Assembly (NCBI RefSeq): GCF_963853765.1
Contig: NC_088855.1
Location: 32,612,001-32,676,000 of the forward strand
Origin: Magallana gigas
Taxonomy: Eukaryota
DNA: 64,000 bases
Reading direction: 5' to 3'
Shown here in pieces: positions 29,827 through 59,149 of the stretch. A program made the translations under genes and the position numbers. Numbering within the stretch: position 1 is the stretch's first letter; every line of letters starts with the position of its first letter. The notes beneath the pieces were generated by a model. That model made no database searches. It was given only the letters and a program-made list of their open reading frames with translations, and had not been told where the DNA came from.

Positions 29827-35518
<5,692 letters not shown>

Positions 35519-35676
35519 GATGTGACTGGATTTACAAATCCAATATGCAACATGTGCAACGTTAAATCCAGGTTTGTTCAATGCTTATAAAAACCACAAT
35601 AAAGTACTTTGCAAGAAAACTCTTTAGAGACTTTAATTTTCCGGAAATAATATTTCTGTCACGATTCAAAGATAAA
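35519..35676. promoter_or_regulatory. Putative ancestral bidirectional promoter of KLHDC4 and SRRD
   Basis: 158 bp between the KLHDC4 ATG (minus, 35518) and the left TSD copy of the SRRD ATG (35677, context gataaaATG); contains an ETS-like palindrome TTCCGGAA near 35639-35646. Promoter role is inferred. Confidence 0.55.
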
Positions 35677-35794
35677 ATGTATGGCACCAAAGTCAAGCTA
35701 CTCAGCAATAAGCTACTCAGCAATAACGAAATTTGTTTACATTTATCGACTATATAATCTGAATTTTCCGATCCCGATTGAAAAAAGTAATCAT

Positions 35795-37920
35795 AAACAG
35801 GGCGCCTAGCGCCCAAACTAGGACTTGTGACACCCAGAGGACACCGGATTCTTGGGGGCACGGGTGTCCCCCCGGGATTCCCGTCCCAAAAAGGGGCGAT
35901 ATTAACACCGATTTCTGGCGCCAGGGCGCTGAGTAGACCCTATCATTCTGTTTAATAGAGAGTCTAAACAGAGCGCCTAGCGCCCAAACTAGGACTTGTG
36001 ACACCCAGGTGACACCGGATGCTTGGGGGCACGGGTGTCCCCCGGGATTCCCGTCCCAAAAAGGGGCGATATTAACACCGATTTCTGGCGCCTGGGCGCT
36101 GAGTAGACCCTATCATTCTGTTTAATAGAGAGTCTAAACAGAGCGCCAAGCGCCCAAATTATGACTTGTGACACCCAGAGGACACCGGATTCTTGGGGGC
36201 ACGGGTGTTCCCCCGGGATTCCCGTCCCAAAATGGGGCGATTTTAACACCGATTCCTGGCGCCAGGGCGCTGAGTAGACCCTATCATTCTGTTTAATAGA
36301 GAGTCTAAACAGAGCGCCTAGCGCCCAAACTAGGACTTGTGACACCCAGAGGACACCAGATTCTTGGGGGCACGGGTGTCCCCCCGGGATTCCCGTCCCA
36401 AAAAAGGGGCGATATTAACACCGATTTCTGGCGCCAGGGCGCTGAGTAGACCCTATCATTCTGTTTAATAGAGAGTCTAAACAGAGCGCCTAGCGCCCAA
36501 ACTAGGATTTGTGACACCCAGAGGACACCGGATTCTTGGGGGCACGGGTGTCCCCCCGGGATTCCCGTCCCAAAAAGGGGCGATATTAACACCGATTTCT
36601 GGCGCCAGGGCGCTGAGTAGACCCTATCATTCTGTTTAATATAGAGTCTAAACAGAGCGCCTAGCGCCCAAACTAGGACTTGTGACACCCAGAGGACACC
36701 GGATTCTTGGGGGCACGGGTGTCCCCCCGGGATTCCCGTCCCAAAAAGGGGCGATATTAACACCGATTTCTGGCGCCAGGGCGCTGAGTAGACCCTATCA
36801 TTCTGTTTAATAGAGAGTCTAAACAGAGCGCCTAGCGCCCAAACTAGGACTTGTGACACCCAGAGGACACCGGATTCTTGGGGGCACGGGGGTCCCCCCG
36901 GGATTCCTGTCTCAGAAAAGGGCGATATTAACACCGATTTCTGGCGCCAGGGCGCTGAGTAGACCCTATCATACTGTTAAATAGGGAGTCTAAACAGAGC
37001 GCCTAGCGCCCAAACTAGGACTTGTGACACCCAGAGGACACCGGATTCTTGGGGGCACGGGGGTCCCCTCGGGATTCCCGTCCCAAAACGGGCAATATTA
37101 ACACCGATCTCTGGCGCCAGGGCGCTGAGTAGACCCTATCATTCTGTTTAATAGAGAGTCTAAACAGAGCGCCTAGCGCCCAAACTAGGACTTGTGACAC
37201 CCAGAGGACACCGGATTCTTGGGGGCACGGGTGTCCCCCGGGATTCCCGTCCCAAAAAGGGGCGATATTAACACCGATTTCTGGCGCCAGGGCGCTGAGT
37301 AGACCCTATCATTCTGTTTAATAGAGAGTCTAAACAGAGCGCCTAGCGCCCAAACTAGGACTTGTGACACCCAGAGGACACCGGATTCTTGGGGGCACGG
37401 GTGTCCCCCGGGATTCCCGTCCCAAAAAGGGGCGATATTAACACCGATTTCTGGCGCCAGGGCGCTGAGTAGACCCTATCATTCTGTTTAATAGAGAGTC
37501 TAAACAGAGCGCCTAGCGCCCAAACTAGGACATGTGACACCCAGAGGACACCGGATTCTTGGGGGCACGGGGGTCCCCCCGGGATCCCCGGTCCCAAAAC
37601 GGGCAATATTAACACCGATTTCTGGCGCCAGGGCGCTGAGTAGACCCTATCATACTGTTAAATAGGGAGTCTAAACTGAGCGCCTAGCGCCCAAACTAGG
37701 ACTTGTGACACCCAGAGGACACCGGATTCTTGGGGCATGGTTGTCCCCCTAAGATCCCCGGCCCTAAAAGTGTCAATATAATCAGCGATTTCTGGTGCCA
37801 GAAACAAGAAATCAAAGAAACAAGAAAACAAAACTGAGTTGACCTTATCATATTGTCAAATAGAGGGTGTAAACAGAGCGCCTAGCACCCAAAGCAGTTC
37901 GTATATCACTCAGATGACAC
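35795..37920. repeat. Left arm tandem array, about 12 units of 170-172 bp plus a degenerate inner unit
   Basis: aaacagagcgcctagcgcccaaactagg recurs at 35795, 35966, 36136, 36307 ... about 37673; units carry scattered variants. Confidence 0.95.
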
Positions 37921-40058
37921 CGGATGTACAGGGGCTTCTAGTCCCCAGGAGATTTCAGGGCACCTGTCGCTCAACCCTATTAAGCAGTTTAGGAAGTTTT
38001 TGCTCATAACGTAGTTTTGAAACAGATGCACGTCATTCACAAAATATTAATTATCTACTAATTCTTTCTTCTCAGGCGTAAAGTCTTTCGTGTTTGTAAA
38101 TGGGGACCAAATAAAACTCCCTGTATAACTCTCAGTCTATGTAACGTCTGATTTCTTGACGAGATATTTAAAAAAATAAGAAAAAGTTAAACATATTTTA
38201 GTAAAAGTGGTGGTATTTTTTAACTGTCCAATTAAATCATTACCAAAAAAAGGGATTCAACTAAAAAGGAAATTATTTTGCTTTACAAAACGTATTTAGT
38301 ATGTAGTTATTTTTGTAACAAAGGTGTTCGATGTGTTCTGTAGTGTTTTAAAATTCTGAAATTTATCTTGTTGACTTTTTTCAAACTATAACCTGTAAAG
38401 GAATATAATCTTTTATGCACGTATGATGATATACGGATGTGTTTATGCTGATATCGATGTACACATCTTTGTCAATAAGTCTGTGAGTGAATATTGTCAT
38501 ATAATGCAAAAACTTGACATTTTTCATTTCAAATATATGTTCATTAGAGGAATAACTGGTTTGTGGCAATTTTTTGACGCTTGTGTCAAAGAAGATGGGT
38601 ATATAAGGCGTGTAAACTGCCTATATTGGGATAAATAAGATACTTTTAAAGGTATATGTGGCGTATTTTTTCATGCTCAGAAATATTTGATTGATTGATT
38701 TATTTCAATATGTTATATAAAGATACATCTTCACAATAAATTACGCAGTTTATATCAATCAGGTTAAAAAGATATAGAAATTAACAAAAGAATTTTTTTT
38801 ACTATTTTCGCGTCCACAATACATGTAAATACAGCATTTGAATAAACCACGTGATACCACGCTCTGTCTATCACAACAACAATGGCGACGACGAGAAATA
38901 TAGGTATACCCGTAATACCGTTAAGTTTGACAGATTTGGCCAAGAAAAAACAAAGAGACAGACTAACAAGGATATGAACAAAGGGAAGATTGTCATCGGA
39001 GACCATGTAGATTGATGGAATAGGAATTAAATCCGAAATAACATAAGTTTTTATCATGTTGTAGGGGTTTTGCTAGTCAGGTTCGTACGTGCTCCATCTG
39101 TTCCATGTCTTTACTTTATAAGTTATGAACCAGTCCACAAGTGGATTTTCGTTTAGAGAAATTTTTGAATAAAGAATAAATAAACACTCTCAGTACATGC
39201 ATCCCTCAGGAGAGGGGGTACTGTATTCACTCATTTTACCGTGTCGTTGATGCTAAAATAGTGTTTCATCTTTATTAAACACAATTAGCAATTTATATCG
39301 TTCTACATTAATGAATTACGGAATAATAATGCTTCGGGTATCATCTGATATAAGAATTATCTAATTTAAGACATAAAAAACGTGATTCTAATTTGTAAAC
39401 AAACTGTTCTTCCATCGTGTTTTCAATACTAGGTTTTCCCGCACTCATGCGCAGTGGCGTTACAAATGGCCGATCACATTAATATTCACCAGACGTGTAG
39501 CAAAGTTTAGAGACAAACAACTTAAGAAAGAACATGTTTTACGGGCCTAGAGTTTGTGAAACGTCTAATTATAAGAAACATGATGTATATTTTTACTAAA
39601 ACTCATGTCAAAAATTTTACTCCAAATACGCCACATATAACTTTAAATTAAAATATGATAAAATATCATAAATTTTGTATAAATTATTGAAAACAATATG
39701 TATTTACCACAACATCGATTTATTACCTTTAAATGTGTTAAATATTTAGAATAGGTTGATTTAAACTGGCGTATGCGTGTCAAAACCTCCAAAAAGTGTC
39801 ATTTTTAGAACTTCAATGCCTTTTCTTTTATAGAGTGGATCTAGGCTACATATTTTTGTCATATAGTCGATATAAGGTTTAAAGGAAATCAAACCGATTT
39901 CAATCAATCAACAAAAACGTGGAGAGATGACCCACTTTACTTTAAAAATGTCATTTTATATCCCGACAATTGAACGATTTAAAGACATACCACAAGTCCG
40001 TAAATTCGTGGTTGAAATTGCATTTAGCATTTAACAATGAAGTTTGTTGTGATTGAAA

Positions 40059-40131
40059 TGGCTCAGTGGTTAGAGCACCAGACATTAGGTAACATTATAG
40101 AGCTAAGGTTTTTAGGTTGTGGGTTCGATAC
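40059..40131 (+). other. tRNA-derived pol III head (SINE-like or pseudo-tRNA), not a functional tRNA
   Basis: A-box-like TGGCTCAGTGGTTAGAGC and B-box-like GGGTTCGATAC; no acceptor-stem pairing. Confidence 0.45.
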
Positions 40132-40574
40132 ATGTACATGTACCAACAAAACTTTAGAATTTTTTTTATCGTTTGTTAAAATATTCAAAACTGAATATAG
40201 TTAGAGATTGTGCCTTTGTAAACTTGTAATATAACATCATCTACTATATTTGGTTGGAAAAAAAAATAATTTGAATTTTTTTTTACGACAAAACCAAATA
40301 GGCATTTGCGCAATCTTGTTCCCCCCATCTTCTTTGTTTCTTGTTTTTAAATTATCCAGCATTTTTTAACTTTGTACTAAGAACACATAATATGTCAGGG
40401 ACAATCCAGGATTTGTTAAAAGGGGCATAAGAAAAGCTTTGACACAAGTTCAAAATTGACCCGATAATTATTTTTCAACGTTAAATATTGAGACAAAAGG
40501 TGTTGAATAAAGACCCTAGTCCGTTGAAAACAGACCTGCAGCGTGGAATTTTGATTCTTGAAACCGGTGTTGTA

Positions 40575-40700
40575 GAGCAGTTTCTCCCCATAGTAGCCCC
40601 CCCCCCCTGGAAAACCTGCTATATCATGGAAAACCTGCTATATACCGTAGTAGCCTTTTCTCCTGGGGGGGGGGGGGGTACTATAAAGTAGTTGTCCCCA
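40575..40700. mobile_element. Small palindromic MITE-like remnant
   Basis: tagtagcccccccccc ... ggggggggggggtacta inverted homopolymer-tipped arms around a duplicated ggaaaacctgctata. Confidence 0.4.
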
Positions 40701-41634
40701 TAGGAGGGTTTCGCCTTCACTTTTTGGTTCAATTTTTATAAAAATTGTTAATGGAAACCCAGTAAAGATTAAAATCAATGTATAACACCCCCAGGATGCA
40801 TATACCTGTATTCATCAGTACATAATGATTTTCGTTTTGTCGATTTATTGGGTTTTTAGACGGGGTGACGTGACCCCGTCTATTGGTTTACTGTCAGCCG
40901 AAGTCTCAAACCGGAAGGCACGCGTAGAACACATGAATTGAGTCTACGCGTACGAAAATAGTGCAAAAAGTTTTTACGCATTTCAGTAAATATGTATTAT
41001 AAAACATGCATTAAATCTTTTTAAGTCCTCTGTGTATAAACAAAATTCTATTTAGAATATAAACAAATAGTTTTATTGATCAAATATTCTTGCTCGGGTT
41101 CAAATGTGGAATGAGTTACGTAACTGAATGCACAGCGCCGTTGACGATTCAGTTGGTGTACGAGCTCATTGATCAATAGAAGAGGTTGATGGTGGAATCA
41201 AAATTAAAGTTCCCAAACGCAATGTGCCATTTTTGAAAAGTTGTGAATTTTATTTTGACAATCTTTCACCTTAATACTACCAAACTTCATGCGCAAGCCG
41301 AAGTTAAAATCGGGATGGGTTAAACATAGATGTTTCACAAATTAAATAGGTGTTTCATTGGTTTCCAGTTTACTTGCGGTATGACTGCTGTTCGTCTCTA
41401 AAGGAATTTTGTACAAAGAAAATAAAAACAAGTCTGAATTTGCCTTCTCGTTCGCTGGCTCCTTAGATGATTAAACTGAATTTAAATTTTAAACAATGCA
41501 TTGTAAGCAAAATCTATAATAGATTATACATTTTGGAAGACTTATACATCATATAATATATACAATCTTATCGACTGAAGAACCAAGTTAAATGTTAATG
41601 TTCATGTTTTCCTGCTTAGTTGGAATCAGGCTTG

Positions 41635-41780
41635 GGGTGAATTACATTGTAAAATAATGCATTACATTACCATTACTTCATAAATTAGGGCATTAAATTA
41701 CCATTACCATTACTTAATATTCTTGAAGTAATGCATTACATTACCATTACATGAGTAAAGTAATGCATTACCATTACTTT
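41635..41780. repeat. CATTAC-motif simple repeat tract
   Basis: Repeated gtaatgcattacattaccattac / cattac motifs. Confidence 0.7.
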
Positions 41781-42702
41781 GTGAAAAGTCAATAAGTTGT
41801 AAAAAAGTAAAACTAAATAAAGAGTTTTTGTAAATATTTCATAAATAAAACATGCTTAAAATATTTACAGTTTCATGTTCACTATCAGGTTCAAATTTAA
41901 TGACTTATACAAGATTGCTGTTGCACTTGTAGTTCTCAAAGTAATGTTGGTCCCGTAACATTTACACGCTAATGGCGGAGTTGACAATCTCTGTTATGTA
42001 TGTCTCTGATTTTCGGAGTATGATTTTTAATGATTAAAATTTTCTACTTTGATATAGTTGTTTGATTTTCCCGGTTAGTAGTAATTTTTAAAAAATTTCC
42101 TTGGGGTCTTATTTTACATAATATATTACATTGTGTCAATTTTCTACAATTATGAAGGCCGGGATTGAGCAAAATTTAGACAAAGTATCAGACAATTGCA
42201 AAAAACCCGAATTAACATATATTGTAACAACTAATTCAAACTCATAAATTTTGGAAGCTTATTCGAGGAAATACAGGACAATTACAAATTTAAACTTTCA
42301 AGACCCCGTCTTTAAGTACTCTCAGTACTTTGATTTTATAGGATATGCTGAAACTTGAACAACTCATCATGGAACACATAGAACTTAATTTAGGTAATTA
42401 TGTCATTGTGTCGATACTGAAATAAAGCCCTACAGCTTGAACAGGATCGAATGATAGAATATTGTCAGTTATTCATTTATAGAACTAGCAATTGTTGTCA
42501 ATTGTCTAACTGACCCATCTACATTTTTCTCTAATCTATAAACCTACCTACTGCATTTTTTGCATAAAATGTCACCAATGCACACGTTCTTTTTGTAAAG
42601 AATTAATTGCATCTACTTTGCAGCACTTCTCCCACAATTGTACAATTTCCTATAGATGCCCTTTCTGGAAAGGCAAACGCAAAATTTTTGCAGGGCATGA
42701 TT

Positions 42703-44200
42703 TTTTAGCTCACCGAGACGAAGTCAAGGGGAGCTTATGCTTTACCCTCGGCGTCGGTGTCGGCGTCCGGACCTGGTTAAAGTTTTTGTTGCAGGTCCTG
42801 TATCTAAGCTATTACTTGTCCTATCTTCGCCAAACTTGCATAGATGATGCATCTGGACCTACTTATGGACTTGAAAGACTTGGATGCTGAATCTGAGTTC
42901 TAAATTTCAGATGCTGGAGGAGGTTAAGGTTGTTGGACCAGGTTAAAGTTTTTGTTGCAGGTGCCCTTTGATACCAATATCTAAGTTACTGCTGGTCTGT
43001 ACTTCACCAAACTTGCATGGATGGTGTGTCTTATAATACTGATGCACCAGACAGGCTTGAGTGCTGAATCTGAGCTATAGGTTTCGGATGCTGGAGGAGG
43101 TTAAGGTTTTTGGAGCAGGTTAAAGTTTTTGTTGCAGGTGCCCCTTGATAGCAAAATCTAAGTTATTACAGGTCCTAACTTCACTAAACTTGTATGGATG
43201 GTGTGTCTTATAATACTGATGCACCAGGCAGGCTTGAGTGCTGAATCTGAGCTATAGTTTTCAGATGCTTGAGGAGGTGTAGGTTTTTAGAGCTGGTTAA
43301 AGTATTTTTAGCAGGTGCCCTCTAATGATTATATCTTAGTTACTCCTGGTCCTAACTTCATCAAACTGGCGTGGATGGTTCGTCTTATGATACTGATGCT
43401 CCTGACAGGCTTGAATGCTGAATCTGAGCTATAGGTTTCGGATGCTGGAGGAAGTTAAGGTTTTAAGACCTGGTTAAAGTTTTTGAAACAGGTGCCCTCT
43501 GATGATTATATCTAAGTTATTACTTGTCCTAACTTCACCAGACTTCCATGAATGGTGCGTCTTATGATACTGATGCACCCGACAGGCTTGAATGCTGAGT
43601 CTGAGCCATAGGTTTCGGATGCTGGATAAGGTTAAGTTTTTTGGAACAGGTCACATGTTTAATAGATGACAGTACTATTTCAAACTTGCATAGTTGATTA
43701 AACTGTAATATGAATGAATTGCAGAGGTAGTTTCAGATGCAGAGCTTGATCTCGATTATCAAGGATGCTAAAAAATATATCTTAGTTATTACAGGTCCTA
43801 ACTTCACCAAACTTGGATGGATGGTGTGTCTTATGATACAGATGCACCTGACAGGCATGGATGCTGAATCTGAGCCATAGGTTGCGGATGCTGGAGGAGG
43901 TTAAGGTTTTAATTGGTAGTGCCCTCTGATGATGATCTCTTACTTATTTCTGGTCCGAACATCACCAAATGTGCATGGATGATGCGTCTTATGATACTGA
44001 TGCACCTGACAGGCTTGAATGCTGAATCTGAGCCATAGATTTCGGATGCTGGATGAGGTTTAGTTTTTTTGAACAGGTCACATGTTTTATAGATGATAGC
44101 TTGCATAGTTGATTTAACTATATAATAAATGAAACGAGATTGCTTCAGATGCAAAGCCTGATCTCAATTATCAAAGATGCTAAAGAAATATCCTACCTCA
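42703..44200 (+). mobile_element. Helentron-derived non-autonomous element (HINE-like) with internal 177 bp tandem array
   Basis: Starts ttttagctcaccgagacgaagtcaaggggagctta (subterminal inverted repeat), then cggcgtcggtgtcggcgtc microsatellite, then units marked by ggttaaagtttttgttgcagg at 42775, 42941, 43118, 43295, 43472 and further degenerate units. No 3' terminal hairpin found. Class assigned from known HINE/DINE-1 architecture. Confidence 0.7.
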
Positions 44201-44249
44201 CTCAAACCTGCTAAATAGATAGATTTGTTTGTTGATAAATGATATAACA

Positions 44250-45750
44250 TGATTCCTATAATATAGTATATTATATGAAACAATATTTTTTTAATATGAT
44301 ACAATATAGTATCATATGTTATATTATAAAAAGTTATATGATACGATGTGATATTGTATCAATTTTTTTGATATTTTATTATATGATATTGTATCATGAT
44401 ATTGTTATGTCTAGTATTGTATATTATGATGCAATATTGTATAATATTATATTGTATTATTAATTTGTTATTTTATCACATGATACTATTACATAAGATA
44501 TTACAAAATATAATATTGTATCCTATGATACAATATTGTATATTCTATAATATTGTATCATACGATATTGTATAATATGATATTGGTTTCTGTAATGTAG
44601 AATTATATCACATGAAATTGTATTGTATGATTTTGTAATATTATATTATATCGTATCATACGATATTGTTTAATATGATATCGGTTTATAAATAGGATAT
44701 ATTATCATATCACATGAAATTGTATTATATCATATTGTAATATATATTATTGTATCATATGATACAACAGGTATAATATAATATTGTATTGTATAATATT
44801 TTACTTATCACATAATATTGTATCATTTGATATGTTACAATGTTGTATCAAATTATATTGCATCATATGATACAATATCGTATTATGTATCAAAAATGAT
44901 ACAGTATCATACAATATCATACTATATTATACAATATAGTATCATATGGTTCAATGTTTTTATGTATTATGTAATATGATATTGTAATATAATACTATAT
45001 TGTATTATATATTATGTTATCACATGTTTATCTCAATATACGGTGGATATCACTCATGGGATGTTGATATTCCACTGTGTGTTCTTACGCCACGTGACGT
45101 CATAGTTAATCATTACGTAGGTTTAGACGGTTGATTGACGTAGAATGAAAAAGTAAATAATTACTTTAATTGAGGGGCGTTGAGATATAAATTTGAAACA
45201 TTTAATGTTGTTTCAGTTATTTGTCATGAATTCATAAAAGAATGTTCGAAAATGAATGTCTGTTTGTTAAACTTCAAGGAACTTTTTTTCCATGCGTAAC
45301 GTTGTTGACGTGTTGTAAATAATGCGTTGTCCGGCTCACAATCACAATTTTTACAGAAAAAGTTGGGATTAACAAAATACTTGGTAAAACATGTGATAAA
45401 AAGAATCTCTCATGATTTGCGATGGTATATGATTTTTATCCAACTCGTTGTGTGTTTTCTATCACACACAACTCGTTGGATAAAAATCATATACCATCGC
45501 AAATCATGAGAGATCCTATATATATTGTATTATTTGATCAAATACAATAATGTATAACACAATACAATATCATATCATACGTTACAATATCATATCTTAT
45601 CATTGTTTATTTCGGTATTTTATTGTATTATATGATATATATTGTAAATATGATAGGATGCAATATTTAATTTTATATTATTGTATTGATTAACATATGA
45701 ACGTTTGATTATCATACAATTTTTTAACACATGATATATGATATTGTGTC
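44250..45750. repeat. AT-rich low-complexity tract (tattgtatcatatgatacaata-type) interrupted by an insertion at about 45030-45516
   Basis: Repeated tattgta / tatgata / atcatat motifs on both sides of a higher-complexity segment ending in a long hairpin. Confidence 0.7.
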
Positions 45751-47738
45751 AAAACAGAATCCATGAATATCCAAGATCGTAAAGTATGATTTTCATTTAA
45801 TATGATGAAGGTGGTCTCATAGAAGGGTGATGTCTCAACTCTTTGCTTTGTAATCTGTGATTACCTATGTTTTTACGTGGCACTTGTTTCAGGTAACACA
45901 GAGTTAATGATTCTTGTATTCAAACAAAGCGTGCTTAAACTAAGGTATAGTTACGGTTGAGTGCTTTCTTTTTCGCTATGTTTAGTGATTTTTAATTTTT
46001 TTAAACATATATCTTTAGATGGTCAACAAAATAACCCTCAGATCTTCCAAAGATTTTAAAATATGATTTATCTACTAGCTATAAATAATAATTTAGAAAA
46101 ATTCATGCATGCATCCTTTTAAATTTGAGTATTTCCCTATATTATATAGAGTTCTTCCTCCAAAGGAGATCAAAACAGTCTAAAAATGGCCACGACCATC
46201 GAACCCTCTTAATAAAAACAATTCTTCTATTGGTTTATATGGTTACATGAACTAAATGTACGATTCTGTCAAGGAATATCCCCTTTCTTATAATTGACCA
46301 AGTGTGTAAATACAAAATTTACAATACTTCATTATTTTTATTTTTATTTTATATTAACACGTACCCAGTGAATGGAAACTCTCAGAATTATTGTACATTT
46401 TTCTGATGTGTGTAAATACAAAATTAACTGTTGTATTTGATATTGTGAATTGTGTTCTTACACCCAATAAACTGTATATTTAAAAATTGTCATTATGATA
46501 TTCATCTGAGTAAATTTACAGCAAAATAAACGGATTTCGTATACATTAGTTTTGAAACAAGCTGCATGTACACTTTCATGCACACTCATTCCTTTACAAT
46601 GCTACATGTATAGTACATGTAACTATCAATATTCATCTTATAAATCGGTATTTTTTGGTAGTTTAAAGTACTATATAAAACGTTTACATGTTACATGTAT
46701 ATACTATAAACATGTATGATGAACAAGATTGAAAAAATACCCGGTTTTTTCTATAAATAAAAATTAAAAATTATGCATTAAAGAATATAAACATGAAGCA
46801 ACTTAATTGTAGTACAGTTTGACGATCATGCAATTTTTCTTCAATTTAATTTATTAAATAAGTTTTTCTCAAGCAAACAGATGATTACATGCGTAAGGGT
46901 AGGTATTATGTGCAGTCCCTTCTTGTAGAGTTTTCAGAGTTTGAAAAATTTCGTCAATGAAATTGTTATATTAAGTGCTTCAGAATGTCAGACATCCCTT
47001 TGACATAACCACGAAAAAGTGTCTGAGAGTTTTAATTATATGTTTATTTATTTTTATTACGTAAAACAAGTTCCAGTTCAAAGACAGTTCAAACCTTTGT
47101 AATTGGGGTCAATTCTCAACAAGATTTTCAATGGACGCAGGTCATCAGAGATAAGAAAGAAATTCAAGCTGTTAAAATTAAATCCCGGGTATAATATTCT
47201 TGTCTTTTGGATTGAAAAATTTTGATATCCACTGTGCAAGTAAATTCTAAAAAAAATTACACTACTTAACACGCTAAAATAAATCGTATCATTTAAATCA
47301 ATTTACAGTATTAACAATAGAATTAAACCATTTTACTTATTTATTTGGGAAAAATTAATTTAATTAAAATAAAACCTTTCGATTAATTTGTTATTTTGAT
47401 TCATTAATATTTGTCTTGAAAATGAATAAGTGCATTAAAATTTAACCATCTAAAAAATAACAAAATATATATTAAAGGTCTCCAAAATGATCACGAAACA
47501 TTCAATTAAAAATGCAATGCATCACCGTCAGAAGCAGGAAAACCCCGATCTAAAAATAGAATCGGTAGGACAACAAAATAGTCCGTTAAAATGAAAAACA
47601 CAAATCTATGCAATCAAATAACAAAATTCACAAAATATCATTAATTCTATATATCAAAATATCTTTCATTAAATATAAAACGAAATAATTATGAACCTAT
47701 CGTAACAAATCAGAAGGACTATATTAATCTCACGCCTA

Positions 47739-50700
47739 GTTTAGACTCCCTATTTAGCAGTATGATAGGGTCTACTCAGCGCCCTGGCGCCAGAAATCGG
47801 TGTTAATATTGCCCGTTTTGGGACCGGGGATCCCGGGGGGACACCCGTGCCCCCAAGAATCCGGTGTCACCTGGGTGTCACAAGTCCTAGTTTGGGCGCT
47901 AGGCGCTCAGTTTAGACTCCCTATTTAGCAGTATGATAGGGTCTACTCAGCGCCCTGGCGCCAGAAATCGGTGTTAATATTGCCCGTTTTGGGACCGGGG
48001 ATCCCGGGGGGACACCCGTGCCCCCAAGAATCCGGTGTCACCTGGGTGTCACAAGTCCTAGTTTGGGCGCTAGGCGCTCAGTTTAGACTCCCTATTTAGC
48101 AGTATGATAGGGTCTACTCAGCGCCCTGGCGCCAGAAATCGGTGTTAATATTGCCCGTTTTGGGACCGGGGATCCCGGGGGGACACCCGTGCCCCCAAGA
48201 ATCCGGTGTCACCTGGGTGTCACAAGTCCTAGTTTGGGCGCTAGGCGCTCAGTTTAGACTCCCTATTTAGCAGTATGATAGGGTCTACTCAGCGCCCTGG
48301 CGCCAGAAATCGGTGTTAATATTGCCCGTTTTGGGACCGGGGATCCCGGGGGGACACCCGTGCCCCCAAGAATCCGGTGTCACCTGGGTGTCACAAGTCC
48401 TAGTTTGGGCGCTAGGCGCTCAGTTTAGACTCCCTATTTAGCAGTATGATAGGGTCTACTCAGCGCCCTGGCGCCAGAAATCGGTGTTAATATTGCCCGT
48501 TTTGGGACCGGGGATCCCGGGGGGACACCCGTGCCCCCAAGAATCCGGTGTCACCTGGGTGTCACAAGTCCTAGTTTGGGCGCTAGGCGCTCAGTTTAGA
48601 CTCCCTATTTAGCAGTATGATAGGGTCTACTCAGCGCCCTGGCGCCAGAAATCGGTGTTAATATTGCCCGTTTTGGGACCGGGGATCCCGGGGGGACACC
48701 CGTGCCCCCAAGAATCCGGTGTCACCTGGGTGTCACAAGTCCTAGTTTGGGCGCTAGGCGCTCAGTTTAGACTCCCTATTTAGCAGTATGATAGGGTCTA
48801 CTCAGCGCCCTGGCGCCAGAAATCGGTGTTAATATTGCCCGTTTTGGGACCGGGGATCCCGGGGGGACACCCGTGCCCCCAAGAATCCGGTGTCACCTGG
48901 GTGTCACAAGTCCTAGTTTGGGCGCTAGGCGCTCAGTTTAGACTCCCTATTTAGCAGTATGATAGGGTCTACTCAGCGCCCTGGCGCCAGAAATCGGTGT
49001 TAATATTGCCCGTTTTGGGACCGGGGATCCCGGGGGGACACCCGTGCCCCCAAGAATCCGGTGTCACCTGGGTGTCACAAGTCCTAGTTTGGGCGCTAGG
49101 CGCTCAGTTTAGACTCCCTATTTAGCAGTATGATAGGGTCTACTCAGCGCCCTGGCGCCAGAAATCGGTGTTAATATTGCCCGTTTTGGGACCGGGGATC
49201 CCGGGGGGACACCCGTGCCCCCAAGAATCCGGTGTCACCTGGGTGTCACAAGTCCTAGTTTGGGCGCTAGGCGCTCAGTTTAGACTCCCTATTTAGCAGT
49301 ATGATAGGGTCTACTCAGCGCCCTGGCGCCAGAAATCGGTGTTAATATTGCCCGTTTTGGGACCGGGGATCCCGGGGGGACACCCGTGCCCCCAAGAATC
49401 CGGTGTCACCTGGGTGTCACAAGTCCTAGTTTGGGCGCTAGGCGCTCAGTTTAGACTCCCTATTTAGCAGTATGATAGGGTCTACTCAGCGCCCTGGCGC
49501 CAGAAATCGGTGTTAATATTGCCCGTTTTGGGACCGGGGATCCCGGGGGGACACCCGTGCCCCCAAGAATCCGGTGTCACCTGGGTGTCACAAGTCCTAG
49601 TTTGGGCGCTAGGCGCTCAGTTTAGACTCCCTATTTAGCAGTATGATAGGGTCTACTCAGCGCCCTGGCGCCAGAAATCGGTGTTAATATTGCCCGTTTT
49701 GGGACCGGGGATCCCGGGGGGACACCCGTGCCCCCAAGAATCCGGTGTCACCTGGGTGTCACAAGTCCTAGTTTGGGCGCTAGGCGCTCAGTTTAGACTC
49801 CCTATTTAGCAGTATGATAGGGTCTACTCAGCGCCCTGGCGCCAGAAATCGGTGTTAATATTGCCCGTTTTGGGACCGGGGATCCCGGGGGGACACCCGT
49901 GCCCCCAAGAATCCGGTGTCACCTGGGTGTCACAAGTCCTAGTTTGGGCGCTAGGCGCTCAGTTTAGACTCCCTATTTAGCAGTATGATAGGGTCTACTC
50001 AGCGCCCTGGCGCCAGAAATCGGTGTTAATATTGCCCGTTTTGGGACCGGGGATCCCGGGGGGACACCCGTGCCCCCAAGAATCCGGTGTCACCTGGGTG
50101 TCACAAGTCCTAGTTTGGGCGCTAGGCGCTCAGTTTAGACTCCCTATTTAGCAGTATGATAGGGTCTACTCAGCGCCCTGGCGCCAGAAATCGGTGTTAA
50201 TATTGCCCGTTTTGGGACCGGGGATCCCGGGGGGACACCCGTGCCCCCAAGAATCCGGTGTCACCTGGGTGTCACAAGTCCTAGTTTGGGCGCTAGGCGC
50301 TCAGTTTAGACTCCCTATTTAGCAGTATGATAGGGTCTACTCAGCGCCCTGGCGCCAGAAATCGGTGTTAATATTGCCCGTTTTGGGACCGGGGATCCCG
50401 GGGGGACACCCGTGCCCCCAAGAATCCGGTGTCACCTGGGTGTCACAAGTCCTAGTTTGGGCGCTAGGCGCTCAGTTTAGACTCCCTATTTAGCAGTATG
50501 ATAGGGTCTACTCAGCGCCCTGGCGCCAGAAATCGGTGTTAATATTGCCCGTTTTGGGACCGGGGATCCCGGGGGGACACCCGTGCCCCCAAGAATCCGG
50601 TGTCACCTGGGTGTCACAAGTCCTAGTTTGGGCGCTAGGCGCTCAGTTTAGACTCCCTATTTAGCAGTATGATAGGGTCTACTCAGCGCCCTGGCGCCAG

Positions 50701-51668
50701 AAATCGGTGTTAATATTGCCCGTTTTGGGACCGGGGATCCCGGGGGGACACCCGTGCCCCCAAGAATCCGGTGTCACCTGGGTGTCACAAGTCCTAGTTT
50801 GGGCGCTAGGCGCTCAGTTTAGACTCCCTATTTAGCAGTATGATAGGGTCTACTCAGCGCCCTGGCGCCAGAAATCGGTGTTAATATTGCCCGTTTTGGG
50901 ACCGGGGATCCCGGGGGGACACCCGTGCCCCCAAGAATCCGGTGTCACCTGGGTGTCACAAGTCCTAGTTTGGGCGCTAGGCGCTCAGTTTAGACTCCCT
51001 ATTTAGCAGTATGATAGGGTCTACTCAGCGCCCTGGCGCCAGAAATCGGTGTTAATATTGCCCGTTTTGGGACCGGGGATCCCGGGGGGACACCCGTGCC
51101 CCCAAGAATCCGGTGTCACCTGGGTGTCACAAGTCCTAGTTTGGGCGCTAGGCGCTCAGTTTAGACTCCCTATTTAGCAGTATGATAGGGTCTACTCAGC
51201 GCCCTGGCGCCAGAAATCGGTGTTAATATTGCCCGTTTTGGGACCGGGGATCCCGGGGGGACACCCGTGCCCCCAAGAATCCGGTGTCACCTGGGTGTCA
51301 CAAGTCCTAGTTTGGGCGCTAGGCGCTCAGTTTAGACTCCCTATTTAGCAGTATGATAGGGTCTACTCAGCGCCCTGGCGCCAGAAATCGGTGTTAATAT
51401 TGCCCGTTTTGGGACCGGGGATCCCGGGGGGACACCCGTGCCCCCAAGAATCCGGTGTCACCTGGGTGTCACAAGTCCTAGTTTGGGCGCTAGGCGCTCA
51501 GTTTAGACTCCCTATTTAGCAGTATGATAGGGTCTACTCAGCGCCCTGGCGCCAGAAATCGGTGTTAATATTGCCCGTTTTGGGACCGGGGATCCCGGGG
51601 GGACACCCGTGCCCCCAAGAATCCGGTGTCACCTGGGTGTCACAAGTCCTAGTTTGGGCGCTAGGCGC
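47739..51668. repeat. Right arm tandem array, 23 x 171 bp, inverted relative to the left arm
   Basis: gtttagactccctatttagcag at 47739, 47910, 48081 ... 51501 (exact 171 bp period); units look identical by eye. Confidence 0.97.
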
Positions 51669-51784
51669 CCTGTATATGATTACTTTTTTCAATCGGGATC
51701 GGAAAATTTAGATTATATAGTCGATAAATGTAAACAAATTTCGTTATTGCTGGGTAGCTTATTGCTGAGTAGCTTGACTTTGGT

Positions 51785-54700
51785 ATGAATGGCTTCCAAG
51801 TTGTTTCACGAAAGAAGAAAGGGAAAAGAAAGAGTACTGGAGCACCGGATATTTTGGTGAACACAACATTGGTCTCAGATAATATTTCTGAAACAAATTT
51901 ACGAAGAAAAGTAAACCTCGCTAGGTAACTCGAATTTCCTTTATTTATATTTCGAATTTGCTCTGCACTGAGTTAATCGTGTTAATATATTTGACACACA
52001 GTATTATCTTTTATTCTTTAGATAAAAATTGTCAGAAATATATGTGTAAGTAATTGTGCTGATTGTACACGTTCAAGTACATTTATGTACATTGTATTTT
52101 ATTATGTTCTTCTTTCAATTTTCAGAGACTCAATAACTTGCACAGACTTTTATACTGATTTTAAAGGTATATCATTTCTGACCATAGCATACAATATATA
52201 GGTTATTCTTGATATTTTCAATAAAAAAATTATTTTGTATACAAACAAGGTATGAAAAATTAATAATTCACAAATGTGATGAACAATCACTTGTTTCTAA
52301 TTATAAAGCTTAAACACTAGCTGTTCTAAGATATTTATGCAGTGCATTTTCTTATTTTATTCAATATTCATAATTACCTCAGGGTTCAAATGATGTTCAT
52401 GCAATGTTCATTCAAAAATATGAAAATTCCCAAGATTTCTATTTTAAAACGCCCCGTCTAGCATATGTCAGGTTTAAATAAAGGCTGAAAATAAAAACAT
52501 GAAAAAGTCTACAGGGATTTTGCATCGCAAATGGCATGAAAGTATTCCGAATGATAATGTTGAAAAATTGCACGAGATGTACTGAGTACTTTTGAATGGA
52601 GAAAAGATGTTAATAACATTTCCCATCTGATGAATCTCCATGAGAAAGTTAACTCTTTTCGTTCCTGTGAATTAACAGATGATGTGTCACCGAAGAAATC
52701 TTGGAATTTCCCCCTTTCATTAATTTCAATTGTACTTAAAATTGACACTATTGAAAGGAATGTTTGTTTTCCTATGATATCGTAAAATGTGACGAAAATA
52801 TATAATTATCTTGGGACAGACTATAGTATTATCATGAATGTGATACTAATTTTATTGAGGGGTAGACATGTATGCTAAATGCTTTACGTCATGTAACCAA
52901 AACTATTGCACAACCCGCAAACTTCATTAAAGTGCTACCTATGATGGGTATAGTCCACTAATGCATTTTCCATAGGCGGTAATGTTAACGTTATGGTTCA
53001 TAGCTCCGGCCCTAATTTTCGTTCAGCAACGAGGGACCTCTTGAATGAAAGCTCATCAAATTGTCTCTTTCCGGTTAAAATTTCGTGGTTTGAAGTCAGA
53101 TTCGTTTTCCGGCAAAATGCGTCTGTATTGAAAAACTCTGAAAATGAAAGTAAAAGTAGGGAATTTCTCAGTTTTGGAAAGGGTGTACATCAAACAATTT
53201 CAATTCTTTTCTTCAAATGATAATTCAATTTTGACACTTGTTTTAAAAATTGCAAATCCTCTTTTCTGACATGTGTCAAGCATTCTGATTTGAAATGTCC
53301 CAATAAATGTATATACACTCTGCAAGTATAGGGACTATTTTGCTTAAAGGCACTTCTTTGTTGTCCTACCGATTCTAAAAATAGTTAGAGGGATATACCC
53401 TGATGTATCAAAGAATTTAGAACACTAAAACTTGATCTTCATTGAATGTAATTGTACACTTTTTTTTTTATTTATATGCAGTATATTCGAATACATGCAT
53501 TCCAAACAAGCTTGCTAACCACTTTCCAGTTCTTTCAGTACTTTGATTCTCTTAAGGCAATGCATTTTATTTGGATGAAGGGGTCTCATACAATGCCCAG
53601 AGTGAAACATAATTTTTTGAAAAATAAATTTTTATTTAAAAATCAGTTTCAATTACTCAGAATATGTAATTTTGCTTATATAATTATCATTGCAGCAAAA
53701 TTAAAAGAGTGTTTGAATAAAGTTCCTTGTATTCATCATGAGGAGACAACTGAGAGTCAGCCAAAGGATCAAATACAATATGTAGTATGTATATTCTGTT
53801 GGAAAGTATGTGTATTTACAAGTTCAAATTAATGATTCATTTAAGGCAATACAATGTATATGCTAACTATGCTGAAAGTGTTATGTTAAAGAATGTTAAA
53901 TACTTAATCCTTATCAATATAGGTATAAACATGTGTGAAGCAATTATATAAGTATCAAATTGAAGATTTTTTTTTTTATCTTGAAACTAGGTTCCAGATG
54001 AAATAGTCTCTTACGGACTTGGAAATTTTGCAGAGTGCTTGATTGCTAGGTATCAGCTAGCACTGCTTGTTGCATTGAGAGATGACTTACAGGTACGTAC
54101 ATGTAGCTCATAAACAACAAAGTCAGTCATAGGTTAATAAATTATTATATGATACAAATAAACAATTTTTTTCACTGCTCAAACATTAAATGACAGTATT
54201 GTTTTTACATTTCAATTTCTGAAACTTTGGTAATTTAAAAAAGCTTTGATCATTGTAGGTTCCACCAAACAATGTACTGCTCTATGATCCTAAGTTCCTT
54301 TCTGTAGAAAAAGATGTATTGACAAGTTTTGGATTTCAAGTTTTGAAAGAAAATGAGGTAAGGGACTCATTAGCCATAAACTTTAATGGAGAGGTCTATT
54401 TTAGAGATACATTAAGTGTTAATGGGCATAATTCAGTGCCCAGCTTTGATAAATATTTAAGGTCCATGTAATGTAAAACAATAATAGGTCAATCTGAAGA
54501 ATGTACTTTATGTAAGAGGAAGGAGTATTGGTAAAATTTTATGATAATTGTAAATATGATCGTGTTATATATTCATATTGATAAATGTATACAATTCAAG
54601 CCTTAAATTTCCAATTTCATGGTACAGGACATGCACATGTTGTAAATTGTTGGGCATGTCAAGAGTGTAATTTCCTTGGACTAACTTGCTCCCTTAACAG

Positions 54701-55993
54701 GAAGCCAAGAGATGCTGCGAGAGGCCAACACTGTTCTACATGCCTCACTGTGGGAAAAGCCTGTACAACAACCTGCTGTTTGCCAACTGGAGTCCTGATA
54801 GACTGTGTCATGTTGTCATCATAGGAAACAGCTTCACAAACATGGTCCAGAAGTCAGTTTTTAAACAATCTACAAATATAAGGAAATTTCTATGTACAGT
54901 TGAACTTTGATTAATCTCGAACCCTGCGATATCTCAGCTACAATGGATATGTCGAAGTGATGATTTGTAAGTCCCAACCACTTAATTTTGAAGAAATTTA
55001 CCCTCAATATCTTGAATACACAGCTTTCTCAAAGTTTTTTAAACAGCCCTATCTAGTTCGAGATAACAAAGTTTCACTGTACATGTACTTCAGTCTCAAA
55101 TGATATTGACCCTTCTAAACTGTTTCTGATCATATGAACTACTTATAATTCTTTAATTTTGGGGGGTTTTGAGGGAGGGTATTTTAATTACAAATTTGAC
55201 GTCGTTGCAACAATTGTATTGCCTTTATTTCAGATTCATATTTTAGAGATAAATGATATGAAAATCTTTTCTTTCAGTTTGCCTAGTAGTACATTAAAAA
55301 GGTGTGCACCTTTGGTAATGAATGTAAGTTAATTGTATTTACTATGATAGAACCATTTTAACAAGAGCATGGACTTTGGGTAGTTGTGTCAAACAGCAAT
55401 GTGACGTAGGCCTGTCTATTTCATTGCTGGCCACTCAGCCATGGCACTTTGAAATCAACAAGATTTGTCTGGCTTTTAAGCTAAGACTACACAATCGGTG
55501 CATATTTCGCTTGAAACCGTGTCATTTTTAACGAAAGTCCAAGGTCTTGTTAAAATGGATCTAATTGCTTTACAAAGGACACTAGTATTGAATGTCAAGT
55601 GTAGTATTTATTAAAAGTTTAAAAACCTGATAAATAAATGTGTACGTGAGCTTGATGAAATAATATTATTCTATTTTTCCAAGAATATTGAATGTCAAGT
55701 CTGTTTTGTATGTGTCTGTAGTTATTTAAAGACTGATTATGCAAATTAAATGAGCTTGATGCACCATCCCAACTAAAAACAAATTTATTAGTTTGATTTG
55801 TTGATTTCAGATTCAGCCATTCACAGAGGAGGTGGTTTTTCCTGGGAACTTCCAGTATCAGGACGTTTTTAATGACACAGTTATCCATGTGTTTCCGAAA
55901 GACAACCTTTCAAAAACAGCAGTGGAATTTTGGGAAGATTGTTCCACACCTACGTATGATGAAGATGATTTGGAATTTATACCCAAATCTTAA
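51785..55993 (+). CDS. SRRD: SRR1-like protein, full-length copy (283 aa, 8 exons)
   Basis: In-phase GT-AG exons 51785-51924 (MNGFQVVSRKKKGKRK...), 52126-52166, 53696-53784, 53991-54092 (EIVSYGLGNFAECLIARYQLALL), 54259-54357 (VLLYDPKF...ENE), 54701-54852 ([23 protein letters not shown]...VIIGNSF), 55278-55323, 55811-55993 (VFNDTVIHVFP...stop). These match the recognisable SRR1-domain motifs. Confidence 0.92.
54897..55079. mobile_element. TA-flanked MITE (CAGTYGAACT ends); copies at 59616-59807 and 62970-63150
   Basis: ta|cagttgaactttgattaatctcgaac ... gttcgagataacaaagtttcactg|ta, present in all three SRRD copies. Confidence 0.8.
55350..55561. mobile_element. MITE with about 28 bp TIRs, specific to SRRD copy 1
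   Basis: ta|gaaccattttaacaagagcatggacttt ... aaagtccaaggtcttgttaaaatggatc|ta; the empty site tatgatagttg is seen in copies 2 and 3. Confidence 0.8.
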
Positions 55994-56256
55994 AAATAAA
56001 CATGTAGACACACAAACTCAATAAAACTACATGTAAAATTATGGGTTTCTTTTTCCCAACAGAGATTAAAAATCTGGACATCATTTGCCAAAAAAAAAAA
56101 AATGAAAATGATTACATGCAACCAAATTAATTTTTTTTAACTTAATGTTTAATTCAACTTAATGGTACCAATAGAATAAGAAAAATAGTTGACTTAATTG
56201 TGAAAGAGTTAGTTTTATCAAAAATGTGTGTGTTAAAGATTTTAGATTTAGACTTT

Positions 56257-56784
56257 AGGCCACACCGAAAAAAACCTTACGAAGTTTTACAATGTAATCC
56301 CTCTGTCTTTAAATTAATTCAAATATTGTCAACCCAAAACGTAAAAGATTTGTGCAATTTAGGTAAATATATCATGAATGCTTTTGTTATCGGAAAACTC
56401 CATGTATATAAAACTTGCCTATTTTCCCATTTTGACCCATTTATATGTATATAAACGCATATTTATTGCTATGTATATGCATGTATTTTAAACAATAAAA
56501 TACAATCTAATTTCTTGTTTGTCACACATCTGATGTAAAAAGAACTAATAGGTGAGCGATTAGATAATCTAATTATTACTTTTTGTAGACAAAACTTTTA
56601 GTCATGAATACTTCTAAGCGGTGGATTATATGTTTTCTACTCTTTCTGATTTGTAAATTAAAACAATTAAAAATACAAAAAATAGAGCAGAATAGAACAG
56701 AATTTTCTAGGTGCAGAAAATTTGAAATATTATTTGGATAAAGTGTGTTGGTCTGACAAACACAAAAATAAATTGGTGTGGCCT
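56257..56784. mobile_element. Kolobok-like TIR element (AGGCCACACC ends) containing a LINE 3' fragment; second copy at 60764-61216
   Basis: ttt|aggccacacc ... ggtgtggcct|taa. Inside, NPSVFKLIQILSTQNVKDLCNLGKYIMNAF resembles the C-terminal tail of non-LTR retrotransposon ORF2 and is followed by AATAAA near 56494. Confidence 0.5.
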
Positions 56785-57624
56785 TAAATATTCACTGAAT
56801 TAGATCTTTTAATATTGATCCGATATTAAACTGATTCAATTTTGGTCCAGTAAAAATCGTTGTTATTTTGACGTAAGTTAACGTTTAACCAAGATGGTGT
56901 CAATTGAAAGATCTTAGTTACATGTGTTGTCGTCTTAACATAATTAAAATTAAAAACATTCCCTGGACTTACTGCAATAATTTTTTCCATTCAAATTTTG
57001 TGTTAATTTTACTGCGCCATGTTATCTTCCCACTAGTGATATATGGAACCATGTGACGATGTATTTATAAAAACGGAACGGAAAAAAACTTTTAATTGAT
57101 TAAAGACATGTACCATTTTTTTAAATTACCGTTATTATTATGTATAAGTGTTAACAATTGAGCAAAAACGATAATTAATAAAGATGAACAATGAATTCAA
57201 CAAATTAATTTCCAACGACACAGCCAACTCAAGATGATTAAAACCAATTTTTTTAATGCTATTTTTAACAATTTTCTGACCTCAAGCCTTAGAGAAGTCG
57301 ATTTAGATGATAATTTGGGTGCTCTGCTTCAGAGAAAAAATACCGACTAATCGTCGAAAAAATACGGTACTTACAATGTATATCATTTTACAATCCTTAG
57401 ATACCAGTATTTGGACGTTCTTCTCATTATTTTTGATATTGATTAAATTTTTATTACCGATGGATTCAAAGGAATTCATAAGAGTCAATATCGAGGTTGA
57501 TATTGTAATTTTTATTGATATTGTTTAATTTGTTTTAATGCAGTTATAGAGATCGCTATTGATTAGGGTACCGACATTTTGTGTACAATATTACCTATAC
57601 ATAATTAGTCTGTCTCGAAATTTA

Positions 57625-57860
57625 TTAGTGTCGATATCGATGTCGATATCGTCATTTTATATACGATATCGTCGATTTCGATAATATAATTGATTTTGCA
57701 ACTTCATCAGTGTGTGTCGATATCGATGTCGATATCATCAAGTTGTGTGCGATATCATCGATATCGACATCATAATCGTCATCATAATTGGTCTAGCATT
57801 TTTCAAAATTCGATATCGATGTCGATATTGTCATTTTGTTTTTGATATCGTCGATATCAA
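57625..57860. repeat. GATATCGATGTCGATATC palindromic low-complexity repeat; second copy at about 61885-62118
   Basis: gtcgatatcgatgtcgatatc recurs several times per copy, at the end of each duplicated unit. Confidence 0.75.
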
Positions 57861-58869
57861 CAACAAAGTTGGTCTTGGACATGTATGAAGAATTTAGACT
57901 ACTAAAACTCAATCTTCTTTTAATGTAATTGTACACTTTATTTTCCTTTACAAAAAATTATTTCTTAATATGAAATTTATATGCAGTATATGCAATTACA
58001 TGCATTCCAAACAAGCTTGCTAACCACTTTCCAGTTCTATCAGTACTTTGATTCTCTTAAGGCAATGCATTATATTTTGATGAAAGGGTCTCATACAATG
58101 CCAAGAGGGAAACATAATTTTTTGAAATATTAATGCCTATTTAAAAAAATCAGTTTTAATGGAGTGTTTGAATAAAGTTACTTGTATTCATCATGAGGAG
58201 ACAACAGAGAGTCAACCAAAGAATCAAATACAATATGTGGTAAGTATATACTGATAACTGTTTGAACAGATAGGTATTACAAGTTCAAATTTATGATTCA
58301 TTTGAGGCAAGTGTTATTTTAAAGAATGTTTAATACTTAATCCCAATCAATATAGGTATAAACATGCGTGAAGCAATTAAGTTGCAAATTCAAGGTATTT
58401 GATTTTATCTTGAAATAGGTTCCAGATGAAATAGTCTCTTACGGTCTTGGAAATTTTGCAGAGTGCTTGGTCGCTAGGTATCAGCTAGCACTGCTTGTTG
58501 CAGTGAGAGATGACTTACAGGTACGTACATGTAATTTATTAACAACGAAGTCAGTCTGAGGTTTTTAATTACTGGACGATTCAAATAAATAATTTTTTTT
58601 CACTGCTCAAACATAAAATGACGGTATTGTTTTACATTTCAATTTTTGAAACTTTGGTAATAAAAAGCTTTGTATTGTAGGTTCCACCAAACAGTCTACT
58701 GCTCTATGATCCTAAGTTCCTTTCTGTAGAAAAAGATGTATTGACAAGTTTTGGATTTCAAGTTTTGAAAGAAAATGAGGTAGGGGACTCGTAAACCTAA
58801 TGTCAATGTTTAGAATACATTGACTCATGAGAGTTAGACAAGGATAGAATGTAATCTAATTAGGATTAG

Positions 58870-58970
58870 AACTTCCATCTGTTCCCCGTATTTGTTACGT
58901 CGCATGGACGTAGACCTGGTAAGCGTGAAAGTCCATGTGACATATCAAAACTGGGGAGCGGATGGAAGTT
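58870..58970. mobile_element. Hairpin/MITE-like insertion in SRRD copy 2 intron
   Basis: aacttccatctgttcccc...gtcgcatggac versus gtccatgtgac...ggggagcggatggaagtt, imperfect arms of about 40 bp; absent from copy 1. Confidence 0.55.
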
Positions 58971-59149
58971 TTCATTTTAAAAAGATGGGGATAGAATCGA
59001 GAGGCCTATTTTAGAGATACACTTAGTGTTAATGGGAACAATTCAGTGCCCAGCTTTGATAAAGATTTAAGGTCCATGTGATGTTAAACAATAGTATGTC
59101 AATCAGAAGAATGTACGTTATGTAAGAGGAAGGAGCACATGTACCAGAA

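What the first reader, a model, noticed from the sequence alone, without database searches (positions are those of the whole stretch)
35677..51793. 16 kb foldback-type transposon whose inverted arms are kilobase arrays of a GC-rich 171 bp satellite
Seen: 124 bp termini starting ACCAAAGTCAAGCTACTCAGC are inverted copies with 3 mismatches. Each runs directly into a 171 bp tandem array (about 2.1 kb left, 3.9 kb right, opposite orientation). The whole is bounded by a 9 bp direct repeat with 1 mismatch. Known: long modular inverted repeats with internal tandem arrays and 9 bp TSDs describe Drosophila FB / MULE-related foldback elements. Inference: this is a non-autonomous foldback family that carries and disperses a satellite. 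I do not recognise the family, but novelty cannot be confirmed without a database search.
Basis: partly seen in the sequence, partly recalled or inferred. Interest (0 to 1): 0.85.

Follow-up and report, generated by a model that had tools for sequence, protein, structure and literature searches.

The report
Oyster foldback transposon on start codon
In the Pacific oyster reference genome, a 16 kb non-coding DNA transposon with satellite-filled mirror-image arms has landed exactly on the start codon of the SRR1 gene; this type of element and the satellite family are already known, but this insertion is absent from every other oyster sequence I could retrieve.

Summary
The structure is real. The window is Magallana gigas chromosome 3 (GCA_963853765.1). 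The element spans 35686-51784, with inverted termini (3 mismatches in 152 bp), opposed 171-bp arrays (11 intact units left, 23 right) and a 9-bp target duplication. Ten of ten other oyster genomic contigs lack the element and carry the 9-mer once, which shows a true, polymorphic insertion. First, the duplicated 9-mer contains the SRR1 start codon, so the element separates SRR1 from the 158-bp promoter region it shares with KLHDC4. Second, the unit is a variant (about 81% by eye) of the published oyster satellite CgiSat28, which Repbase already matches to MuDR and which was enriched in CenH3 chromatin. The 9.8-kb interior has no detectable transposase and is a patchwork of nested repeats. Best reading: a non-autonomous Mutator-type foldback, like Tetris or Rehavkus, moved in trans. 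I could not retrieve a second copy or an autonomous partner, so family status and satellite dispersal remain inferred. Verdict: new member of a known kind, of moderate interest.

The parts
35677..35685 (+). Left TSD copy (ATGTATGGC); holds the original position of the SRR1 start codon
35686..35801 (+). Left outer terminal module (116 bp, AT-rich) with two 15-bp direct repeats at 35695-35726
35802..37679 (+). Left array: 11 intact 170-172 bp units, 0-15 substitutions apart among units 1-10; CgiSat28-family variant
37680..37960 (+). Degenerate inner units of the left arm (about 73% to the unit); no counterpart on the right arm
37961..47737 (.). Non-coding interior, 9.8 kb, 31% GC, patchwork of nested repeats; no Pfam hit below E 0.01 in 106 stop-free pieces
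38650..39642 (.). Nested 1-kb element with about 20-bp inverted ends between TTAA copies (Kolobok-like; the name is from my own knowledge)
42706..44240 (+). Nested Helentron-like repeat with 177-bp central repeats matching the CgiSat37 primer site five times; 3' end not identified, boundaries approximate
   Evidence: PMC8268682, PMC7492417
45017..45523 (.). Nested element ending in a 60-bp-arm hairpin (45396-45523) inside an AT-rich simple repeat; Crypton-like from memory only; Rfam miRNA hits are below gathering score and reflect the hairpin
47738..51668 (-). Right array: 22 letter-identical 171-bp units plus a near-complete innermost unit; 97% to left unit 11, 90-93% to left units 1-10
51669..51784 (-). 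Right outer terminal module (116 bp)
51785..51793 (+). Right TSD copy (ATGAATGGC) = first three codons of SRR1
51785..55993 (+). Host gene SRR1-like (SRRD), 8 coding exons, no stop inside the matched exons; annotated as 283 aa from the TSD ATG
35519..35676 (.). 158-bp head-to-head region between the KLHDC4 start (35518, minus strand) and the insertion; includes an inferred SRR1 5'UTR intron 35572-35671

Best explanation
A non-autonomous cut-and-paste DNA transposon of foldback build, most likely Mutator (MuDR/MULE) superfamily. A transposase encoded elsewhere in the genome bound the 116-bp outer modules, cut the target with a 9-bp stagger and inserted the 16-kb unit at the SRR1 start codon (insertion and 9-bp duplication shown; enzyme inferred). 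The 171-bp units are subterminal repeats, probably extra transposase binding sites, that expand and contract by slippage or unequal exchange; the right arm is a recent expansion of one hybrid unit (pattern shown, mechanism inferred). The interior is old repeat-rich cargo carried passively (inferred). On this haplotype SRR1 keeps its coding exons but is cut off from its promoter, so it is probably a null or weak allele unless the right arm supplies a promoter (inferred, untested).
For: TIR and TSD geometry. Empty site with a single 9-mer in 10/10 genomic contigs and in related oysters; C. virginica keeps the two genes 139 bp apart. Flanks differ from empty alleles by 0.4-1.2%, within the 0.8% seen among them, so the insertion sits on an ordinary haplotype. 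A 32-mer of CgiSat28 matches 33 units with 2-3 mismatches, 0 expected; CgiSat28 is listed as DNA/MuDR with 487-548 monomers on all 10 chromosomes (PMC8268682). MULE TSDs are 8-11 bp and TIRs long (PMC6446971). Subterminal repeats raise Muta1 transposase binding and excision (PMC5499845); Muta1 derivatives have heterogeneous interiors and favour genic sites (PMC5225508). A 9-mer of the terminal 15-bp repeats recurs, inverted, once per unit (0.4% of shuffles for the terminal repeats, 5.9% for the whole outer module; post hoc).
Against: No transposase here and no autonomous partner or second copy retrieved, though none of these tools searches the oyster genome. The MuDR label is a Repbase similarity for the satellite, reported in a table without the family name. 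Both TSD copies differ from the empty allele at the same position (G in 10/10; T left, A right), which a clean duplication does not explain. AcademH also makes 9-10 bp TSDs (PMC10045372).
Confidence: 0.75

Rival explanations
1. Composite (two-element) transposition: two separate arms or half-elements of the same family flanked a piece of host DNA elsewhere and moved it together, so the 16-kb unit is a one-off and not a family.
For: The arms differ (outer units 92% alike while the termini are 98% alike; the right arm lacks the degenerate inner units). The interior looks like ordinary repeat-littered oyster DNA.
Against: Asymmetric arms and variable middles are normal for foldbacks (Tetris, PMC4079207; Muta1 derivatives). 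The right unit can be derived from left-type units by one recombination. The chemistry would be the same as in the best explanation.
Confidence: 0.12
2. Same structure, but mobilised by another superfamily with 9-bp TSDs (AcademH, or Merlin), not by a MULE transposase.
For: AcademH makes 9-10 bp TSDs (PMC10045372). No transposase was seen to decide the matter.
Against: Repbase match of the homologous satellite is DNA/MuDR. Most foldbacks with tandem-repeat TIRs and 9-bp TSDs are Mutator-related. Merlin is given as 8 bp.
Confidence: 0.09
3. Assembly artefact: the inverted structure, or the long identical right array, was produced by the assembler.
For: 22 letter-identical units are unusual beside a left array with 3% mean divergence. 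No independent contig with a filled junction was found.
Against: 48x HiFi hifiasm assembly, QV 59.7, no gap in the window (PMC11267148). An assembler would not create a 9-bp duplication at the exact ends. Both arrays (2-4 kb) should be shorter than typical HiFi reads. The copy number of the right array is more open to doubt than the element itself.
Confidence: 0.04

Closest known systems
CgiSat28 / Cl282-Cl455-Cl460 satellite group of Magallana (Crassostrea) gigas (PMC8268682, PMC7348941)
   Same: Same species; GC-rich (56%) monomer; 133 of 164 aligned columns identical by eye; 32-mer matches 33 units; Repbase class DNA/MuDR; the three published clusters are themselves about 80% alike.
   Different: Unit is 171 bp, not 182 bp (one 11-bp gap); the published reverse primer does not match. 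The passages I read describe the repeat as a satellite and do not describe inverted arms, termini or TSDs.
Tetris of Drosophila virilis (PMC4079207)
   Same: Non-autonomous foldback; outer flanking domain, tandem 220-bp units, variable non-coding middle; 8-10 bp TSD; long arrays more homogeneous than short ones; motif shared between outer domain and unit.
   Different: AT-rich units, outer domain up to 866 bp, complete copies have TIRs up to 1.7 kb; no sequence comparison was made.
Rehavkus elements of Tribolium (bioRxiv 10.1101/2024.12.02.626372; PMC6446971)
   Same: MuDR-related, 9-bp TSD, satellites in inverted termini (up to 50 monomers; termini over 11 kb in a Rehavkus-like element).
   Different: Known from arthropods and annelids; defined by a transposase with a PHD finger, which is not present here.
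Muta1 of Aedes aegypti and its derivatives (PMC5225508, PMC5499845)
   Same: Foldback-type MULE; 8-9 bp TSD; asymmetric subterminal repeat numbers; heterogeneous interiors; genic insertion bias.
   Different: TIR 145 bp with 12-bp repeats, against kilobase arms with 171-bp units here.

Membership tests
Foldback-type element (structural class) | Long modular TIRs: outer domain plus internal tandem repeats, inverted at both ends | tested here: met
Foldback-type element (structural class) | Variable, usually non-coding middle | tested here: met
   No ORF above about 100 aa outside repeats and no Pfam hit; variability between copies not testable
Foldback-type element (structural class) | True insertion with TSD (empty site exists) | tested here: met
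   10/10 empty alleles
Mutator / MuDR / MULE superfamily | 8-11 bp TSD | tested here: met
   9 bp, 1 mismatch between copies; range from PMC6446971
Mutator / MuDR / MULE superfamily | Long TIRs (over 100 bp) | tested here: met
   152 bp at 98%, then kilobase arrays
Mutator / MuDR / MULE superfamily | MULE DDE transposase in this copy | tested here: not met
   No hit in 106 stop-free interior pieces of 33 aa or more (pieces within the Helentron-like array, about 42750-44100, were left out); so at most a non-autonomous derivative
Mutator / MuDR / MULE superfamily | Autonomous partner with the same termini encoding a MULE transposase | not testable with these tools
   No nucleotide search of the oyster genome, Repbase or Dfam; indirect look-ups negative
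Mutator / MuDR / MULE superfamily | Sequence similarity to a curated MuDR family | tested here: inconclusive
   Indirect: the homologous CgiSat28 is listed as Repbase DNA/MuDR; family name not given
CgiSat28 satellite group | Monomer homology at the level seen inside the group (about 80%) | tested here: met
CgiSat28 satellite group | CenH3 enrichment of this particular variant | not testable with these tools
Rehavkus | Transposase with PHD finger | tested here: not met
   No coding sequence; works like Rehavkus, membership not claimed
AcademH | 9-10 bp TSD | tested here: met
AcademH | Transposase plus helicase, and family-type termini | tested here: inconclusive
   No coding sequence here; defining paper not held
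P / Galileo foldbacks | 7-8 bp TSD (own knowledge) | tested here: not met
   Lengths 7 and 8 give 6 mismatches each

The most novel reading that the evidence does not exclude
An active oyster foldback family moves 15-20 kb units whose arms are arrays of a CenH3-associated satellite, so it seeds candidate centromeric repeats at new sites in a species that lacks a dedicated centromeric satellite; and here it replaced a gene's promoter exactly at the start codon, with SRR1 now read from the right arm.
Probability: 0.1. Interest if true: 0.65.

Novelty: new member of a known kind. Interest (0 to 1): 0.38.

Why it matters
For oyster repeat biology it gives a structural home to a satellite so far catalogued only as a monomer: CgiSat28-type units are the subterminal repeats of a foldback transposon, a second route of satellite spread beside the well-described Helentrons. 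The right arm (22 identical units) is a snapshot of array growth inside a mobile element. For users of the reference genome, the SRR1 locus in xbMagGiga1.1 is an unusual insertion allele, not the common state, and its promoter annotation will mislead. It is also a natural, testable promoter-separation allele in a head-to-head gene pair. None of this is a new kind of system.

Tried and rejected
Exact-pattern scans for the terminus and the unit in metagenome, viral and bacterial genome collections: no hits. Spurious ORFs across the terminus, the arrays and the interior used as handles to pull other copies from protein-indexed contigs: all negative; the tool reads alternative starts as M, so these are valid look-ups, but they need an exact called gene and say little about copy number. 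Pfam scan of interior pieces: nothing below E 0.01. Rfam: only sub-threshold miRNA matches to one hairpin. No tRNA. The outer terminus has no unusual fold (z -0.6). The interior matches nothing else in the window or in the 34 loci. The bacterial promoter scan is not meaningful for an oyster. Human alpha satellite, suggested by the 171-bp period, is rejected: the window is oyster and the unit matches CgiSat28. Other TSD lengths rejected.

Full report
Observation. The element runs from 35686 to 51784 (16,099 bp). Its ends are inverted copies with mismatches at positions 32, 76 and 111 and none further until 153. After about 116 bp each end runs into a 171-bp array: 35794-37801 (11.8 copies, 95% matches) and 47738-51668 (23 copies, 100%), in opposite orientation. 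Arrays are 55-57% GC in a 32% background. Of duplication lengths 2-13 only 9 fits, with one mismatch; chance about 2e-4.

Host and neighbourhood. An SRR1 exon searched by reference hit a Magallana gigas protein at 98%, whose locus in GCA_963853765.1 is identical to window 48159-64000. The window is therefore chromosome 3 (OY970747.1) from base 32,612,001, in a 48x HiFi hifiasm assembly with QV 59.7 (PMC11267148). The left neighbour is a kelch-domain gene, KLHDC4, starting at 35518 on the minus strand. The right neighbour is SRR1-like; its first codon is the first three bases of the right TSD copy, the database gene call starts at exactly that base, and a database SRR1 protein maps over eight exons without a stop.

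Empty site. The short ORF over KLHDC4 exon 1 pulled ten genomic contigs from other sequencing runs, 94-99% identical to the window including introns, so taken as conspecific. All ten join window 35676 directly to the SRR1 coding start with one copy of the 9-mer. Transcript contigs of related oysters show the same, and C. virginica has the two genes 139 bp apart. This shows a true insertion with a 9-bp duplication and that it is polymorphic. The look-up ranks long contigs first, which favours empty alleles, so it gives no frequency; no filled junction was found on record. The flanks differ from empty alleles by 0.4-1.2% (mean 0.7%), against 0.8% among them, so the insertion is young on the scale of oyster polymorphism. 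One oddity: the empty allele has G at position 4 of the 9-mer, the left copy T and the right copy A. Two changes at one position are far above background; error-prone gap filling or a private SNP plus one later change are possible, and I leave it unexplained.

The satellite is known. The C. gigas satellitome lists CgiSat28 (182 bp, 44% AT, Repbase DNA/MuDR, about 500 monomers over all ten chromosomes; PMC8268682). By eye it is collinear with the right-arm unit: 133 of 164 columns identical plus one 11-bp gap that accounts for 182 versus 171. A 32-mer from it matches 33 units with 2-3 mismatches, none expected. A full machine alignment was left out because the consensus has no reference here. 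CgiSat28 resembles cluster Cl460, one of three clusters about 80% alike that were enriched in CenH3 ChIP and gave centromeric signal on 1-2 chromosome pairs plus dispersed signal (PMC7348941). Whether the 171-bp variant is one of those clusters could not be checked.

Arms. Left units 1-10 differ by 0-15 substitutions (mean 3%), unit 11 is distinct, and two degenerate units follow. The right arm has 22 letter-identical units, 97% like left unit 11 and 90-93% like the others; its 5' part carries a doublet otherwise seen only in left unit 2 and its 3' part the variants of left unit 11. The simplest reading is collapse to one hybrid unit and recent re-expansion, with loss of the degenerate inner units; whether this happened here or in the donor is unknown, and an assembler effect on the count is not excluded. 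The 9-mer CTACTCAGC from the two 15-bp repeats at the tip recurs, inverted, once in each unit (0.4% of shuffles for the tip repeats, 5.9% for the whole outer module). This post hoc match is a candidate transposase binding site, as proposed for Tetris and shown for Muta1 subterminal repeats.

Interior. The 9.8 kb between the arms has no long ORF and 106 stop-free pieces gave no Pfam hit below E 0.01. It holds a 1-kb element between TTAA copies, a Helentron-like repeat with CgiSat37 units, a hairpin-ended element in an AT-rich tract and smaller repeats. The nested 177-bp repeats are about 80% alike, far more diverged than the flanks, which suggests that much of the interior arrived as cargo; this is inference, since such units can already be diverged when a Helentron inserts.

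Mechanism. Shown: insertion as an inverted-repeat-bounded unit with a 9-bp duplication, no transposase detected inside, asymmetric arrays. Inferred: mobilisation in trans by a MULE transposase (confidence 0.75), from TSD length, long TIRs, the Repbase label of the satellite and the foldback precedent. Rivals are a one-off composite of two arms (0.12), another 9-bp-TSD superfamily such as AcademH (0.09) and misassembly (0.04).

Effect on SRR1 (inferred). Transcripts of a related oyster splice from the equivalent of 35571 to 35672, five bases before the start codon, so SRR1 is transcribed from the region shared with KLHDC4. On the filled haplotype that transcript would read a 26-codon ORF from the left TSD into the terminus, 16 kb short of the coding exons. 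The allele is probably null or weak unless the right arm drives transcription; outward-reading Mutator termini are known to do this in maize (own knowledge). KLHDC4 keeps its 158 bp of upstream sequence. Nothing here measures expression.

Comparison and verdict. It works like Tetris and the Tribolium Rehavkus elements, whose inverted termini carry satellites of up to 50 monomers or over 11 kb. It meets the structural tests for a foldback and the TSD and TIR tests for MULEs; the transposase test fails in this copy and the partner could not be sought, so it is filed as a probable non-autonomous MULE-type foldback and not as a Rehavkus. The family may already be in Repbase. What I did not find described is the arm structure around CgiSat28-type repeats and this insertion on the SRR1 start codon of the reference genome. 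New member of a known kind; interest 0.38.

Noticed in passing
window 53403-64000 and L007 to 26950: The 3' exons of SRR1 are repeated in tandem with a period of about 4.5 kb, at least five times beyond the intact copy; the database models them as a separate 354-aa protein (XP_065933928.1). The last copy seen has a stop.
   Followed up: partly
window 52947-53400: A 454-bp insertion in SRR1 intron 2 with short inverted ends (GGG...CCC) and a 5-bp duplication; absent from contig L024, so a second polymorphic small transposon.
   Followed up: partly
window 35677-35685 and 51785-51793: Both TSD copies differ from the empty allele at the same position (G to T left, G to A right); the right change turns SRR1 residue 2 from Asp to Asn. 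Unexplained.
   Followed up: partly
window 35519-35676; L034 7861-8001; L008 1938-2099: KLHDC4 and SRR1 are head-to-head 140-160 bp apart in several oysters, with overlapping 5' transcript ends and a 100-bp intron in the SRR1 5'UTR; a CCGGAA (ETS-type) word lies at about 35642.
   Followed up: partly
each 171-bp unit, e.g. window 35931-35940: Each unit holds a 9/10 match to the 10-bp terminal motif of mosquito Muta1. This is one independent match, noticed after the fact, and may be chance.
   Followed up: partly
window about 17500-27400: Exons of an ADAMTS metalloprotease gene on the plus strand, tail-to-tail with KLHDC4; same order in C. virginica.
   Followed up: no
window 40037-40160: A tRNA-like stretch with A-box and B-box resemblance by eye, perhaps a SINE remnant; not called by ARAGORN or Rfam.
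   Followed up: partly
window 40590-40684 and 41600-41800: Two small nested repeats in the interior: an inverted pair with poly-C/poly-G tracts, and a cluster of short palindromic repeats.
   Followed up: no
window 22932-23061 and 25882-26009: A 130-bp inverted pair (80%) inside the ADAMTS gene.
   Followed up: no
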